From: Ylistrum balloti
Lineage: Eukaryota
DNA length: 64,000 bases
Direction of reading: 5' to 3'
Assembly (NCBI RefSeq): GCF_031769215.1
Contig: NW_026782309.1
Location: forward strand, 1 to 64,000
Shown here piece after piece: positions 1-3,965 of the stretch. The position numbers were made by a program, and so were the translations under genes. A model generated the notes under the pieces. The model ran no database searches and was not told the DNA's origin. It saw only the letters and a program-made list of their open reading frames with translations. The first letter of the stretch is position 1. Every line of letters begins with the position of its first letter.

Positions 1-3000
1 GAAGATATGAAATGGAATATTGTTAATATTTATGCGCCTAATATTGTGAGTGACAGAAAAGTATTTTTTGATCAGTTAAAAGATTGGCTAGTGCCTTTTA
101 CAGAGAACCTGATTACAGGGGGTGATTTCAATACAACCTTATCTACACTTGACCGTACTGGTGCTACGACACACCAGGTAAATCCCAGTGTGACTGCATT
201 GAACAGTATAATGTTTACATGTGACGTTTACGATATTTGGCGAAAAAGAAACAGAAATTGCGCTATTTTTTCTCGTAAGATGATTAGTAATGGTAAATTA
301 TCACAAAGCCGTATAGACTACTTCTTAATTTCAAAAGGACTAGGTCCTTATGTACAGAACATTTACTACAATGATACATCTTTCAGTGATCATTGTTTTG
401 TAGTCATGAAAGTAGACTGTGCTTTAGGAAGTAAAGGTCCTGGTATTTGGATTTTTAATAATTCATATCTATTAGAGGATGATTTTAATAACAAAATCAG
501 ATATATTATTACAGAGGCCAGAACTTGTGATTTGTATATCAGTGAACCCAAAGTCTGGTGGGACAATTTGAAATACAAAATTAAAAAGTTTTCTCAGGTC
601 TATGGTAAAGACCGGAGTAAACGACGTAATGCTGAATTTTATAGAATTCAAAATAAGTTACAAGCGTTTTCTTGTGATATTGCTAATGGAAAAAAGTTTG
701 ATTGTGATAAGTATGAAGCGTTACGGCATAGTTTAGAAAAGTTTGAAGGCGAAAAATGTAATGGGGCAGTTTTAAGGTCAAAGGCTAAATGGGCTGTAGA
801 TGGAGACAAATGTACTGGTTACTTTTTAAGGTTAGAGAAATATAGACAAGGCTGTAATGCGATTAAAAAACTACAAAGTATAAATGGTAAAGTTGTAAGT
901 AGTGAAGATGAGTTATCTCATGAAATATTTAATTTCCATAGTGAGTTGTATAATTGTACCAACACATCTGATGATGATATTGATCATCTTTTGTCCTATA
1001 TTGATACAACAGTGACCGATGAAGATCGTGATAAGTGTGACGCATCTATCACTGTTGATGAAATTAAAGAAGCATTGTTTGGTATGTCTAAAAACAAAAG
1101 TCCTGGTTTAGACGGACTTACTGTTGAGTTTTATTGTCATTTTTTTGAGGATTTGCGTTTTGTATTTCCTCGTGTTGTTCATAGTATCTGGGAAGATAAA
1201 GAACTTTCCAGAACTATGAAACAAGGTGTTATAAATCTTGTCTATAAAAAGAAGGGTGATAAATCTTTGTTAAAACATTGGCGCCCAATTAGTCTCCTAA
1301 ATGTAGACTATAAAATACTAGCCAGAGTTATGTCCAATAGACTTAAATCAGTCTTACCCTCTATTGTTTCAAGATTTCAGTCATGCTGTGTACCTGGTAG
1401 AGACATCTCTGACACTATTTTTAGTGTCCGAGATATTATTGATGTTATTGATCAGGAGAATTCTGAGGGTTACATACTTAAAATAGACCAACAGAAAGCT
1501 TTTGACCGTGTTTCACATTCATATTTGTTCAAAGTTTTACAGAAATTTGGTTTTGGGGAAAATTTTATTAATTGGGTTAAGATTTTTTATTCTAAAATCT
1601 CTAGCTGTGTTAAGTATAATGGGAATCTTACAAAGTTTTTTCCTGTGCACAATTCAGTTAGACAGGGTTGTCCGATTTCGGCTATGCTGTACGTTTTGAC
1701 TGCTGAACCTTTGGGCTGTATGTTTTCAAAATCTCCTGATATTTCTGGTATCAAAGTGCCTTGTGCAAATTTCGAGTCAAAGGTATATCAACACGCTGAT
1801 GATACTACCTTGACACTAAGTGACAAACAGTCTATTAGTAAAGTTTTTAACTTATTAGAAGTATATAGTAAAGGTTCAGGAGCCAAGATAAATAAAGATA
1901 AATCGGAGATCTTGTGTGTAGGTAAAGGAAGTATTTCCAATGATGAAGTGGATCAGTTAAGCATTACTGTATGTAAAAAGAGTATATGTGTACTTGGTGT
2001 TTATGTTGGTACAGATACTAATGATTGTAATATGAAGAATTGGGAGAATAAAGTTAATTCTATTAAATCTATTTTAAGGTCATGGTCTCAAAGACAGCTG
2101 ACTCTACATGGAAGAGCTACTGTAATTAGTGCCTTACTTATGTCAAGGTGTTGGTATTGTATTACCTCTCAGACAATACCTTTGGTTTTTATAAATAATA
2201 TTAAGAAAGCATGTATAGATTTCTTATGGAATAATGGTGCTCACCTGGTTGCCTATGATACTATAATTGGTAAAAGGGAAGTCGGGGGTCTAAATATTCC
2301 GGACATGGAATTAAAACTAAGATCGTTTAGGTTGAAATTTTTGTTCAGGTGGTTGGATAATTCCTGTAGTGCTGCTTGGAAATGTATGTGTCGATATTTC
2401 TTTAACAAAATTCTGAATTTACAGTTGGGTACAGAAGTAATTTATTGTAAATTCTCTGATAAGTACCTTAGAGTATTACCGATCGTTTATCGGGAGATGA
2501 TAAAGGCATGGTATGCCTTTCAGGCTGTTAATGATGTATTTTATGAAAACAGAAACAGTTTCTTTGTATACGAACAACCATTGTTTTTTAATTCTACTAT
2601 ATTAAAGAATGACAATCCTGTATTTATTGATGCCTTTGCCAAGGCGGGTATTACAAAAGTGAAACATTTGACACTTGAACTTGTACCTAAGTTCCTTTCT
2701 GCTCATGCAGTAGCAGACATTGTCAGAGAATATAATGCTGACATTTCAGTGGATATTATTTTATCCGATTTTAACTTGATTATGAGTTGTATACCAGCTG
2801 AATACAAGAAAACAGTTTTAACCAGTGTTCACACAAATACTAGTACGGAGTGTCAACCTTATGTCGTGTACAAGGATGACAATGGCACCACGGTAAAGAT
2901 TTTTCCCAGGTCTACTCGGGAGATTTATGCGTGTTTTATCAGACGTTGTTTTAAAAAGCCAAAGGCGGTAGATTACTGGTCAGACATTTTTGAAAATGCT

Positions 3001-3872
3001 GATTTGAAGCCCGTTTTTTCTATAATGTATATGCCCTTTTTGCCCTCAGATATCATTGATGTCCATTTTCGCACTGTCCACAATTCTATTTTTACTATGG
3101 ACAAGTTGATGAAAATTGGTAAAGTAGATAGTGATGTTTGTCTTGTGTGTAATATAAAAAAGGAAACATTACAACATATGTACTTTGAATGTTCGGAACT
3201 GTCAGACTTCTTAGATTATATTGATATGTTAACAAGGAAGTTGCTTAAGGATGCTAACCCCACTTATATTGTTGATGTGTCTCTTAGGAAGCTGGTTCTT
3301 TTTGGTTACACTAGAAAAATTAAAGGAACAAATCATTTTTTCCTCAACTTCTTGTTAGGTGTAGTCCGTTTTTGTATTTTTAAAAGAAGAAATCTTGTAG
3401 TGAATAAAATGTCAAAGGTTGATTTGAGGAATTTTTTTATGTATACTCTTCGTAAATATTTTGACTACGTACAAATTTACTACAAGGTGAACAATAAACC
3501 GTTTCTTTTTGCCAAATACATGGTACAGAATAATCACTTGTTAGAGAAGAATAATTCTTCAGAAAGAAATTTAGTACTGTCATTGTGAATTATGTTAACG
3601 CAATATTTGAGGGTGTGTATTATAAAGCCTTTATTAGATTAAAGACACATTCTATTTTTATTCAATCTGATGGAATGATAAAATACTCACTATTTCACAT
3701 TCGAAGAGACCGACATGTATTGTTTTTTTAATGATTATTTGATTATCATATTATGTAAGCTATGATATTGTCATCGATCTATATATGCACTGTGAGGAAC
3801 CTCCGGGGCACCAACCCCGTAGGCCCTATTTGCTGGTACATTAAAATTAATTTAAAAACAAAAAAAAAAAAA
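1..3872 (+). mobile_element. Tx1-clade (L1 group) non-LTR retrotransposon, 3' portion, inserted into a 5S rRNA gene
   Basis: Intact ORF2, a 284-bp 3' UTR and an A-run (3860-3872) joined directly to 5S nt 28 (CCGGTTCTCG...). The 5' end lies outside the window. Confidence 0.93.
7..3588 (+). CDS. LINE ORF2: APE endonuclease + reverse transcriptase + C-terminal CCHC zinc knuckle (N-terminus probably cut by the window edge)
   Basis: EN motifs NIYAPN, GGDFN, SRIDYFL, SDH. RT motifs KSPGLDG, WRPISLLNVDYKIL, DQQKAFDRV, RQGCPIS, QHADD. Zinc knuckle CLVC..ETLQHMYFEC. The frame is open back to base 1. Confidence 0.95.
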   Translation: MKWNIVNIYAPNIVSDRKVFFDQLKDWLVPFTENLITGGDFNTTLSTLDRTGATTHQVNPSVTALNSIMFTCDVYDIWRKRNRNCAIFSRKMISNGKLSQSRIDYFLISKGLGPYVQNIYYNDTSFSDHCFVVMKVDCALGSKGPGIWIFNNSYLLEDDFNNKIRYIITEARTCDLYISEPKVWWDNLKYKIKKFSQVYGKDRSKRRNAEFYRIQNKLQAFSCDIANGKKFDCDKYEALRHSLEKFEGEKCNGAVLRSKAKWAVDGDKCTGYFLRLEKYRQGCNAIKKLQSINGKVVSSEDELSHEIFNFHSELYNCTNTSDDDIDHLLSYIDTTVTDEDRDKCDASITVDEIKEALFGMSKNKSPGLDGLTVEFYCHFFEDLRFVFPRVVHSIWEDKELSRTMKQGVINLVYKKKGDKSLLKHWRPISLLNVDYKILARVMSNRLKSVLPSIVSRFQSCCVPGRDISDTIFSVRDIIDVIDQENSEGYILKIDQQKAFDRVSHSYLFKVLQKFGFGENFINWVKIFYSKISSCVKYNGNLTKFFPVHNSVRQGCPISAMLYVLTAEPLGCMFSKSPDISGIKVPCANFESKVYQHADDTTLTLSDKQSISKVFNLLEVYSKGSGAKINKDKSEILCVGKGSISNDEVDQLSITVCKKSICVLGVYVGTDTNDCNMKNWENKVNSIKSILRSWSQRQLTLHGRATVISALLMSRCWYCITSQTIPLVFINNIKKACIDFLWNNGAHLVAYDTIIGKREVGGLNIPDMELKLRSFRLKFLFRWLDNSCSAAWKCMCRYFFNKILNLQLGTEVIYCKFSDKYLRVLPIVYREMIKAWYAFQAVNDVFYENRNSFFVYEQPLFFNSTILKNDNPVFIDAFAKAGITKVKHLTLELVPKFLSAHAVADIVREYNADISVDIILSDFNLIMSCIPAEYKKTVLTSVHTNTSTECQPYVVYKDDNGTTVKIFPRSTREIYACFIRRCFKKPKAVDYWSDIFENADLKPVFSIMYMPFLPSDIIDVHFRTVHNSIFTMDKLMKIGKVDSDVCLVCNIKKETLQHMYFECSELSDFLDYIDMLTRKLLKDANPTYIVDVSLRKLVLFGYTRKIKGTNHFFLNFLLGVVRFCIFKRRNLVVNKMSKVDLRNFFMYTLRKYFDYVQIYYKVNNKPFLFAKYMVQNNHLLEKNNSSERNLVLSL

Positions 3873-3965
3873 CCGGTTCTCGTCCGATCACCGAAGTTAA
3901 GCAACGTCGAGCCTGGTTAGTACTTGGATGGGTGACCGCCTGGGAATACCAGGTGTCGTAGACTT
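3873..3965 (+). pseudogene. 5S: 5S rRNA gene, 3' part (nt 28-120), interrupted by the Tx1 element
   Basis: Identical to nt 28-120 of the intact copies and followed by a T-run terminator. Confidence 0.95.

What the first reader, a model, noticed from the sequence alone, without database searches (positions are those of the whole stretch)
1..3965. Intact Tx1-clade retrotransposon inserted at nt 27/28 of 5S rRNA: candidate 5S-specific element
Seen: an uninterrupted 1193-aa EN-RT-ZF ORF whose poly(A) joins ...GTTGAAAACA|CCGGTTCTC in 5S, plus a second junction in the same 5S segment at 20043. Known: Tx1-clade families with APE endonucleases can be sequence-specific for multicopy RNA genes (Mutsu for 5S in fish, Keno for U2, Dewa for tRNA arrays). 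Inference: this is a recently active 5S-targeting family, possibly independent of Mutsu. A target-specific EN+RT would be of gene-insertion interest.
Basis: partly seen in the sequence, partly recalled or inferred. Interest (0 to 1): 0.75.

Follow-up and report, generated by a model that had tools for sequence, protein, structure and literature searches.

The report
Jumping gene targeting 5S and tRNAs
A young Tx1-type jumping gene in a bivalve genome lands at one fixed spot inside 5S rRNA genes and, with the same protein, at one fixed spot inside several tRNA genes, so it is aimed at RNA polymerase III genes in general, not at 5S alone.

Summary
Window 1-3588 is an open EN-RT-zinc-finger frame, and its poly(A) (3854-3872) abuts 5S rRNA nt 28. 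A second 5S/element joint lies at 20043. The copy cannot be shown intact, because the contig starts inside it. Full copies elsewhere are 5,716 bp, with ORF1 of 442 aa and ORF2 of 1,301 aa.

"5S-specific" is wrong. All 16 assembled 3' ends of this family (one variant 96%, one short copy 92%, the rest 99-100% identical) lie in Pol III genes, always in sense:
- seven in 5S at nt 27/28
- seven in tRNA-Val
- one in tRNA-Gly
- one in tRNA-Ile

Most tRNA junctions fall at the end of the D loop (21/22). TSDs range from 0 to 28 bp. No substitution separates 5S-borne from tRNA-borne copies. The window's ORF2 differs from a tRNA-Val copy at 2 of 1,195 residues, neither in EN. The 5S and tRNA sites share no sequence motif.

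Two sister families in the same genome (72% and 66% identical) also sit in such genes. On an ORF2 tree the group is sister to a clade that holds a fish-type 5S element, probably Mutsu-like.

My best reading is that something at the level of the gene guides the nick, such as the Pol III complex or DNA structure. This is inferred.

This scan reported the same bivalve group before on other DNA of this genome (s1-234342, s1-234354).

The parts
1..3588 (+). ORF2, residues 107-1301 of 1301, open to its stop; cut at the 5' side by the contig start
   Evidence: 1193/1195 aa identical to a full copy on contig C149
1..402 (+). C-terminal part of the APE-type endonuclease domain, including the Tx1L-like hairpin loop
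   Evidence: PF03372 over residues 14-237 of the full ORF2; best PDB match is the L1-EN/Tx1 loop chimera 2v0r
1246..1974 (+). reverse transcriptase domain (RVT_1)
   Evidence: E 3.3e-37, residues 416-658 of the window frame
2977..3198 (+). zf-RVT zinc-binding domain
   Evidence: E 7e-07
3589..3853 (+). 3' UTR
3795..3827 (+). conserved 3' UTR hairpin shared with sister families; a likely RT recognition element (inferred)
   Evidence: 13 pairs, 3 with compensatory changes among 6 sequences
3854..3872 (+). poly(A) tail with one C
3873..3964 (+). 5S rRNA gene nt 28-119, the 3' flank of the insertion
6348..6466 (+). first intact 5S gene of the 2.5-kb array (others at 12509, 15008, 17507, 22290, 24789, 27293): uninterrupted target copies
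20006..20043 (+). 5S nt 1-38: upstream flank of a second, older insertion (5' junction; implies a TSD of 9-11 bp)
20044..20229 (+). remnant of ORF2 (matches window 669-859 at 98%); the rest of the element and unit positions 39-440 are deleted

Best explanation
This is one copy of a very young Tx1-type non-LTR retrotransposon. The full element is 5,716 bp plus poly(A). ORF1 (442 aa) has CCHC knuckles. ORF2 (1,301 aa) has APE endonuclease, RT and zf-RVT domains. A conserved hairpin sits in the 3' UTR. Shown: it integrates in sense orientation at a fixed nucleotide inside genes with internal Pol III promoters. In 5S rRNA genes the site is between nt 27 and 28. In tRNA genes (Val, Gly, Ile) most junctions lie between the last D-loop base and the first base of the 3' D-stem strand (21/22). 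The junctions are typical of target-primed reverse transcription. The bottom (template) strand nick is precise in 5S and in most tRNA copies. The top-strand nick varies, giving 0-28 bp TSDs. There is frequent 5' truncation and microhomology at the 5' joint. Essentially one protein sequence serves both kinds of target. Inferred, about 50%: the nick is not placed by reading one DNA word, because the 5S and tRNA sites share none. It is placed by a property common to these genes. The most likely candidate is the assembled Pol III factor complex (TFIIIB/TFIIIC, with TFIIIA on 5S). Measured from the transcription start, that complex would put both sites roughly 27-30 bp downstream. The alternative is a shared DNA or structural feature at a loop-to-stem boundary. 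Landing in multicopy genes keeps the cost to the host low.
For: Every assembled 3' end of the family lies in 5S or tRNA genes, in sense. TSDs: 5S nt 28-37/38, and nt 28-55 in the copy on contig C30. tRNA-Val TSDs are 12 bp in one full-length copy (script), about 14 bp in a second (read by eye; the script did not call it) and 0 bp in the truncated copy. tRNA-Gly 7 bp and tRNA-Ile 13 bp. Rebuilt empty sites give complete tRNA-Gly(TCC) and tRNA-Val(AAC, CAC, TAC) genes in ARAGORN. No substitution separates 5S-borne from tRNA-borne copies. Shared polymorphisms cut across targets, and the EN region is identical between them. Identity between the 5S and tRNA sites at equal offsets is at chance level: 3-5 of 19 upstream, 3-7 of 20 downstream. 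Sister families in the same genome are also in such genes. The 72% family is in 5S at 27/28, in tRNA-Val(CAC) about 3-4 nt downstream of family A's site, and in tRNA-Glu. The 66% family is in tRNA-Lys, Ala and Gln by reading of the flanks. Infernal confirms the Lys and Glu flanks as tRNA model positions 21-71, cut at the 5' side; the Glu score is 28.9 bits, just under the 29-bit cut-off, and the Ala flank gave no hit. Two different families inserted one after the other at the same tRNA-Ile nucleotide. A 43%-identical relative from another source has tRNA flanks on both sides.
Against: No experiment or transcription-start data support tethering. The tRNA leader length in this animal is unknown, so the equal distance from the start site is an estimate. 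All known Tx1-clade specificities are attributed to direct DNA reading by the endonuclease. Relatives at about 30% identity sit in single targets, including U1 snRNA genes, which Pol II transcribes. The 5S junction is exactly conserved in a distant relative (L058), which fits sequence reading as well. tRNA D-loop ends share a short word (GGT, one or two bases, then A) that could be read directly. Some tRNA-Val junctions lie 2-13 nt further downstream. Many copies lie in arrays or possible haplotigs, so the count of independent events (at least 12 by my count) is lower than the copy count.
Confidence: 0.5

Rival explanations
1. Direct but relaxed or dual sequence reading. The endonuclease, as in Tx1L and other Tx1-clade elements, recognises DNA itself. 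It keeps an ancestral 5S site and has gained a degenerate tRNA word at the D-loop end. No host factor is involved.
For: Tx1-clade relatives are sequence-specific for single small-RNA genes. A distant relative (L058) uses exactly the same 5S junction. tRNA sites share GGT, one or two bases, then A, just upstream of the nick. Dada DNA transposons also hit several tRNAs and 5S, by sequence similarity. The EN hairpin loop is Tx1L-like.
Against: The 5S and tRNA sites show only chance identity at equal offsets. Downstream sequence is almost free across 11 targets, with 0.1-1.3 bits per position. One unchanged EN sequence would have to read two unrelated words.
Confidence: 0.35
2. One reading: a 5S-specific family, with non-5S copies being accidents.
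For: Seven of 16 3' ends, plus the remnant at 20043, are in 5S at the same nucleotide.
Against: Nine of 16 3' ends are in tRNA genes of three isotypes. Most are at one structural position and several have TSDs. They include two full-length copies, one with both ORFs open.
Confidence: 0.02
3. Trans-mobilisation. The family's own protein is 5S-specific, and its tRNA-borne copies were inserted by the machinery of a tRNA-specific sister family that recognises the shared 3' hairpin.
For: The 3' UTR hairpin is conserved between families. The 66% family was seen only in tRNA-type targets.
Against: Full-length, ORF-intact copies sit in tRNA-Val, and LINE proteins generally prefer their own RNA (established knowledge of cis preference). 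The 72% family also shows both target kinds. The tRNA-borne copies make up more than half of the family.
Confidence: 0.06
4. A few insertions spread afterwards by array duplication, gene conversion or assembly redundancy, which mimics targeting.
For: Some copies are clear duplicates. The two copies truncated at nt 2780 on C568 are one case. The copies truncated at nt 1043 on C149 and C1113 are another.
Against: Distinct 5' truncation points, TSD lengths, poly(A) lengths and four target gene kinds on six contigs give at least 12 separate events.
Confidence: 0.03

Closest known systems
Mutsu (Tx1 clade, zebrafish; Kojima and Fujiwara 2004; Locati et al. 2017, PMC5340908)
   Same: Two-ORF, poly(A)-tailed APE-type LINE inserted in sense in the 5' part (loop B region) of 5S rRNA genes. 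Many copies are young with open ORFs. A fish-type 5S element (L057) falls in the sister clade on the ORF2 tree.
   Different: Here the site is nt 27/28, against 23/24 in the fish-type relative. The family is not confined to 5S, since more than half of its copies sit in tRNA genes. ORF2 identity to the fish-type relative is only about 30%.
Dewa (Tx1 clade, zebrafish)
   Same: A Tx1-type LINE associated with tRNA gene arrays.
   Different: Dewa is described as targeting the spacer of tRNA-Leu arrays (PMC3706591). This element cuts inside the tRNA coding sequence of several isotypes, and in 5S too.
Dada DNA transposons (PMC3706591, PMC8869645)
   Same: The same choice of multicopy small-RNA genes (several tRNAs, 5S), fixed intragenic positions near the A box, and a specificity that is not always limited to one tRNA type.
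   Different: Dada elements are DDE cut-and-paste transposons with 6-7 bp TSDs, and related targets show sequence similarity. This is a TPRT retrotransposon whose two target kinds share no motif.
Dictyostelium TRE5-A and yeast Ty3 (Pol III complex-tethered retroelements)
   Same: One element serves many different tRNA genes. From my own knowledge, TRE5-A also serves the 5S gene. These are the works-like model for gene-level recognition (PMC3706591 discusses TRE5-A).
   Different: Those elements insert upstream of or at the start site and spare the gene. This one inserts about 21-28 nt inside the coding sequence and destroys the copy. No interaction with Pol III factors has been shown here.
Earlier notes of this scan on the same genome (s1-234342, s1-234354)
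   Same: Tx1-like LINEs inside tRNA-Lys and tRNA-Gly at the same spot. Their follow-up already concluded that a bivalve group aims at one fixed spot in many Pol III genes.
   Different: This report shows that one near-identical family, with one EN sequence, uses both 5S and tRNA targets. It also places the group next to a fish 5S element.

Membership tests
Tx1 clade (L1 group) of non-LTR retrotransposons | ORF2 with N-terminal APE endonuclease, RT and a C-terminal zinc-binding domain; nearest solved relative is L1 ORF2p | tested here: met
   Pfam PF03372, PF00078 and PF13966; human L1 ORF2p at E 1.9e-80, R2 far weaker
Tx1 clade (L1 group) of non-LTR retrotransposons | Tx1L-type hairpin loop in the EN domain | tested here: met
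   The L1-EN chimera carrying the Tx1 loop (2v0r) scores 87.2 bits against 74.3 for wild-type L1-EN. The gain lies in the loop with the G-x-[LV]-SQS-[RK]-ID match. This is indirect, through a chimera.
Tx1 clade (L1 group) of non-LTR retrotransposons | RT phylogeny groups it with reference Tx1 families (Repbase, RTclass1) | not testable with these tools
   No Repbase or Dfam sequences are available. Proxy: relatives at about 30% identity sit in 5S, U1 and near U2 genes, as Tx1 families do.
Tx1 clade (L1 group) of non-LTR retrotransposons | ORF1 with zinc knuckles upstream of ORF2 | tested here: met
   442-aa ORF1 with several CCHC-like motifs (zf-CCHC below the Pfam cut-off, E 0.0069) and an ATGA stop/start overlap
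Mutsu | Specific insertion in 5S rRNA genes | tested here: not met
   It inserts in 5S at nt 27/28, but 9 of 16 copies are in tRNA genes
Mutsu | Groups with MutsuDr families on an RT tree | not testable with these tools
   No named Mutsu sequence is held. A fish-type 5S element (L057) lies in the sister clade, 98% SH-aLRT on a quick tree.
Dewa | Insertion in the spacer of tRNA-Leu arrays | tested here: not met
   Junctions lie inside the tRNA coding sequence, mostly at 21/22
Pol III complex-tethered retroelements (TRE5-A, Ty3 type) | Many different Pol III genes serve as targets without a shared DNA word | tested here: met
   5S plus Val, Gly and Ile for this family; Glu, Lys, Ala and Gln for sister families; chance-level identity between 5S and tRNA sites
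Pol III complex-tethered retroelements (TRE5-A, Ty3 type) | Insertion outside the gene, at a set distance upstream, through binding of TFIIIB or TFIIIC | tested here: not met
   Insertions are intragenic; factor binding is not testable here

The most novel reading that the evidence does not exclude
A LINE whose endonuclease is positioned by the assembled Pol III transcription complex, or by a structure common to active type 1 and type 2 Pol III genes. It nicks the template strand at a fixed distance of roughly 27-30 bp inside the transcribed region. This would be a mode of intragenic, factor-guided targeting not described for any retrotransposon, and it would be portable across all tRNA and 5S genes.
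Probability: 0.3. Interest if true: 0.8.

Novelty: new variant of a known kind. Interest (0 to 1): 0.6.

Why it matters
Target-specific LINEs are studied as natural machines for putting DNA into harmless multicopy sites; R2 is already used this way (PMC11371274). Known Tx1-clade elements are each tied to one target sequence. A single, apparently active family that hits one exact position in 5S genes and in several unrelated tRNA genes poses a clear and testable question. Either the APE-type endonuclease reads two unrelated words, or it is guided by the Pol III machinery. Either answer would broaden what is known about how LINEs choose targets. I found no paper describing a LINE inserted at the D-loop/D-stem boundary of many tRNA species. 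I could not consult Repbase or Dfam, and this scan had already met the group in this genome.

Tried and rejected
After that I sent none of those letters to search tools and worked beside them.
- The look-up of sequencing runs found the element only in DNA runs of two coded organisms in three studies, with no RNA holder. Expression is therefore untested.
Further copies of the two sister families are listed but their flanks are unread.
- Kojima and Fujiwara 2004 and the supplement of Locati 2017 are not held. The exact Mutsu site and sequences could not be compared.
- ARAGORN found no tRNA in the flanks of 60 distant relatives, so tRNA targeting was seen only in the mollusc clade.
- Infernal did not recognise the putative tRNA-Ala fragment, nor any partial tRNA when whole loci were scanned.
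- A search for a shared motif between 5S and tRNA sites found none.
- A search for target-specific subfamilies found none.
- Rejected readings: chance insertion, 5S-only specificity, and co-transcription from the Pol III promoter. The last fails because the insertion separates the start site from the 5S control region, and a 5.7-kb AT-rich unit is expected to contain Pol III terminators (inference; not counted here).
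Full report
**What is in the window**

The window is the first 64 kb of contig C452 of a 648-Mb assembly. From nt 1 an open frame of 1,195 codons runs to a stop at 3586-3588. It carries RVT_1 (E 3.3e-37) and zf-RVT domains.

A 265-nt 3' UTR follows, then a 19-nt poly(A) with one C (3854-3872). The next base, 3873, is nt 28 of a 5S rRNA gene, which continues to its end at 3964.

Seven complete 5S genes follow in a 2.5-kb repeat. At 20006-20043 one unit keeps only 5S nt 1-38. After it come 191 bp that match window 669-859 at 98%, and the unit then resumes at its position 441. 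This is the 5' joint of a second, 5'-truncated insertion whose remainder was later deleted. The joint shows 2 nt of microhomology.

The copy cannot be called intact, because the contig starts inside it.

**The whole element**

Other copies in the genome show the full unit. It is 5,716 bp plus poly(A).
- ORF1 is 442 aa with several CCHC-type knuckles.
- ORF2 is 1,301 aa with APE endonuclease (PF03372), RT and zf-RVT domains.
- The two frames are joined by an ATGA stop/start overlap.

The window copy lacks the first 1,746 bp. One copy on C149 has both frames open. Others carry a frameshift or small deletions.

Identity to the window copy is 99.66-99.95% for six full-length copies and 99.2-100% for the truncated ones. 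One variant is 96.3% identical and one short copy 92%. The catalytic residues of EN and RT fall in invariant columns of an alignment with 24 relatives.

A hairpin in the 3' UTR (3795-3827) is kept in sister families, with compensatory changes in 3 of 13 pairs. I take it as a likely recognition element for the RT. This is an inference.

**Where the family sits**

A search with the 3' UTR found every assembled 3' end. Together this gives 16 ends:
- Seven join poly(A) to 5S nt 28. They lie on contigs C452, C30, C1113 (two) and C568 (three).
- Seven join tRNA-Val genes on C149 and C1113.
- One joins tRNA-Gly(TCC) on C402.
- One joins tRNA-Ile(AAT) on C580.

All are in the sense orientation of the target gene. 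None lies outside such genes. 5S and tRNA genes together make up far less than 1% of the genome; even the rough upper count of 5S candidates amounts to about 0.25%.

In tRNAs the junction usually follows the last D-loop base (A21), just before the 3' strand of the D stem. Three tRNA-Val junctions lie 2, 3-4 or 13 nt further downstream.

TSDs show that these are true integrations.
- In 5S: nt 28-37/38 in the two truncated C568 copies and in the window remnant, and nt 28-55 in the C30 copy.
- In one C1113 copy the 5' joint lies 193 nt after the 5S start. This means either a 166-bp duplication that leaves a whole 5S gene upstream, or a deletion within the array.
- In tRNA-Val: 12 bp in one full-length copy by script, about 14 bp in a second by eye, and 0 bp in the truncated copy.
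- In tRNA-Gly 7 bp and in tRNA-Ile 13 bp.

Removing the element and one TSD copy restores complete tRNA-Gly(TCC) and tRNA-Val(AAC, CAC, TAC) genes in ARAGORN.

Some copies are duplicates: the same truncation point on C568 twice, and on both C149 and C1113. Counting distinct truncation points, TSDs and targets, I find at least 12 separate events.

**One protein, two kinds of target**

I aligned all copies and listed the variable sites. No site separates 5S-borne from tRNA-borne copies. The few shared polymorphisms (positions 1506, 2855, 3063, 3723) cut across the target classes.

In the first 1.8 kb, 5S-borne and Val-borne copies are 99.7-99.9% identical. The stretch that encodes the first 106 EN residues has one variable site, which again is not linked to the target. 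The window's ORF2 part differs from the tRNA-Val(TAC)-borne C149 copy at 2 of 1,195 residues, both outside EN.

The reading "5S-specific" is therefore refuted. So is a split into two cryptic subfamilies.

**Sister families and relatives**

Two related families in the same genome also sit in such genes.
- The family at about 72% DNA identity is in 5S at 27/28 (four copies), in tRNA-Val(CAC) about 3-4 nt downstream of family A's site, and in tRNA-Glu(CTC).
- The family at about 66% identity is in tRNA-Lys(TTT), Ala(AGC) and Gln(CTG), and in one tRNA-like sequence.

The isotypes other than Lys and Glu rest on my reading of the flanks. Infernal, run from the junction, reads the Lys and Glu flanks as tRNA model positions 21-71 cut at the 5' side. 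The scores are 31.8 and 28.9 bits; the second is just under the 29-bit cut-off.

On C580 a 489-bp copy of this family is followed directly by a 9-nt tail plus A14. Those 9 nt match the end of the 66% family, and both parts carry the same TSD. This looks like two families using the same tRNA-Ile nucleotide in turn.

The best public proteins are only 46% identical. The named ones come from Mytilus and Patella. A host gene in the window is nearest to bivalve proteins, at 62% to Tegillarca. The host is therefore an unnamed bivalve.

A metagenome scan gave 80 relatives.
- L056 (43% identity) has tRNA-Lys nt 1-38 upstream and tRNA-Tyr from G22 downstream.
- L057 (30% identity) sits in a teleost-type 5S gene, with 5S nt 1-30 upstream, nt 24 onward downstream and a 7-bp TSD.
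- L058 uses exactly the 27/28 junction in another invertebrate 5S gene.
- L059 and L061 sit in U1 genes, and L080 lies next to a U2 gene.
- Sixty distant relatives had no tRNA in their flanks.

On a quick maximum-likelihood tree of 46 ORF2 proteins:
- the three own-genome families form one group (100% SH-aLRT);
- that group lies inside a mollusc clade;
- the mollusc clade is sister (98%) to the clade holding the fish 5S element;
- the 5S/U1 group lies further out.

This pattern of small-RNA gene targets is what the literature describes for the Tx1 clade. The EN also matches the L1-EN chimera carrying the Tx1L hairpin loop better than it matches wild-type L1-EN, at 87.2 against 74.3 bits. I therefore accept "Tx1-type". 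A tree with named reference families could not be made.

**How it most likely works**

Shown: the junctions are those of target-primed reverse transcription.
- The template-strand nick is at a fixed nucleotide in 5S and in most tRNA copies.
- The second-strand nick is variable.
- The cDNA is poly(A)-primed without any need for T-rich target sequence.
- Copies are often 5'-truncated.

Not shown: what places the first nick. At equal offsets from the nick, the 5S site and the tRNA sites agree at 3-5 of 19 upstream and 3-7 of 20 downstream positions, which is chance level. Across 11 target kinds the downstream 20 nt carry 0.1-1.3 bits per position.

tRNA targets share only the D-loop end (GGT, one or two bases, then A). 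The 5S site has nothing like it at that place.

What the sites do share is their position. Each lies at a loop-to-stem boundary about 21-28 nt into a gene with an internal Pol III promoter, always in sense. If tRNA leaders are about 5-10 nt, which is general knowledge and not measured here, both sites lie roughly 27-30 bp from the transcription start.

I therefore favour guidance by the assembled Pol III factor complex or a common structural feature, at about 50%. The model is how TRE5-A and Ty3 work, although those elements insert outside the gene.

The main rival, at about 35%, is direct reading of two unrelated words by a Tx1-type endonuclease. Three points support it: the exact conservation of the 5S junction in the distant relative L058, the single-target habits of the wider clade, and the precedent of Dada transposons.

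**Known or new**

- Mutsu (5S, zebrafish) is the closest named family. This element shares the region of 5S and probably its ancestry. It differs in the exact site and, above all, in not being confined to 5S.
- Dewa is described as targeting the spacer of tRNA-Leu arrays, which is not what is seen here.
- Four full-text searches found no description of a LINE that inserts at the D-loop/D-stem boundary of many tRNAs and also in 5S. Repbase and Dfam could not be checked.
- Two earlier follow-ups of this scan, on other DNA of the same genome (s1-234342, s1-234354), had already concluded that a bivalve Tx1-like group aims at one fixed spot in many Pol III genes. My data agree. They add that a single near-identical family with one EN sequence does both, and that the group is sister to a fish 5S element.

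**Limits**

No letters of that stretch were sent to search tools afterwards.
- No RNA run holds the element, so expression is untested.
- The tree is a quick search with SH-aLRT support only.

**Verdict**

The 5S-only interpretation is wrong. The element is a new variant of the known kind "target-specific Tx1 LINE", with an unusual multi-gene, fixed-position target range whose mechanism is open.

Noticed in passing
L025 (G000:C580:614995-618483), about 1989-2030 in locus coordinates: Two insertions in a row at the same tRNA-Ile(AAT) nucleotide. A 489-bp copy of this family is followed by a 9-nt tail plus A14 whose letters match the end of the 66% sister family. Each part is followed by the same 12-13 bp TSD.
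   Followed up: partly
G000 contigs C30, C323, C1113 versus C452, C568: The genome has two kinds of 5S array, with 487-bp units and with 2.5-kb units. The element is found in both.
   Followed up: partly
window 6467-12508: An irregular stretch of the 5S array. It holds spacer copies at 87-95% identity without a 5S gene between 8092 and 12508, so two to three units have lost or never had the gene.
   Followed up: no
L035 (G000:C1113:8412-17500): The 5' joint of a full-length copy lies 193 nt after a 5S start, 74 nt into the spacer. This is either a 166-bp target duplication that leaves an intact 5S gene upstream or a deletion in the array.
   Followed up: partly
L031 (G000:C30:92000-101999): The C30 copy is a mosaic. 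Its first 1.8 kb (5' UTR and ORF1) are only about 90% identical to the other copies, while the rest is 99.8% identical. This suggests recombination between subfamilies.
   Followed up: no
L056 (metagenome contig JYMV01051942.1): A relative with tRNA-Lys(TTT) nt 1-38 at its 5' side and tRNA-Tyr from G22 at its 3' side. The flanks are chimeric, from recombination between two insertions or from misassembly.
   Followed up: no
L059, L061 (metagenome contigs): Relatives at about 30% identity are inserted in U1 snRNA genes about 21-28 nt from the 5' end. The depth is similar to that of the 5S and tRNA sites, although U1 is a Pol II gene.
   Followed up: no
L054, L055 (G000 contigs C90, C44): Short sequences share the conserved 3' UTR hairpin and tail of these LINEs but are not next to a recognisable Pol III gene. 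They may be SINE-like or old partner elements.
   Followed up: no
window 43703-45715 (-): A 670-aa ORF with DDE_1 and a Tc5-type HTH: a pogo/Tc5-like DNA transposase.
   Followed up: no
window 60766-63096 (+): An intronless 776-aa ORF with three RRMs and a SPOC domain (RBM15/spenito-like). Its nearest named relative is from Tegillarca granosa at 62%, which places the host among bivalves.
   Followed up: partly
window 40782-42686 (-): A 634-aa repetitive ORF with only weak, repeat-driven Pfam matches (DUF7575, conotoxin-T word). It overlaps ORFs in other frames and is probably low-complexity sequence.
   Followed up: no
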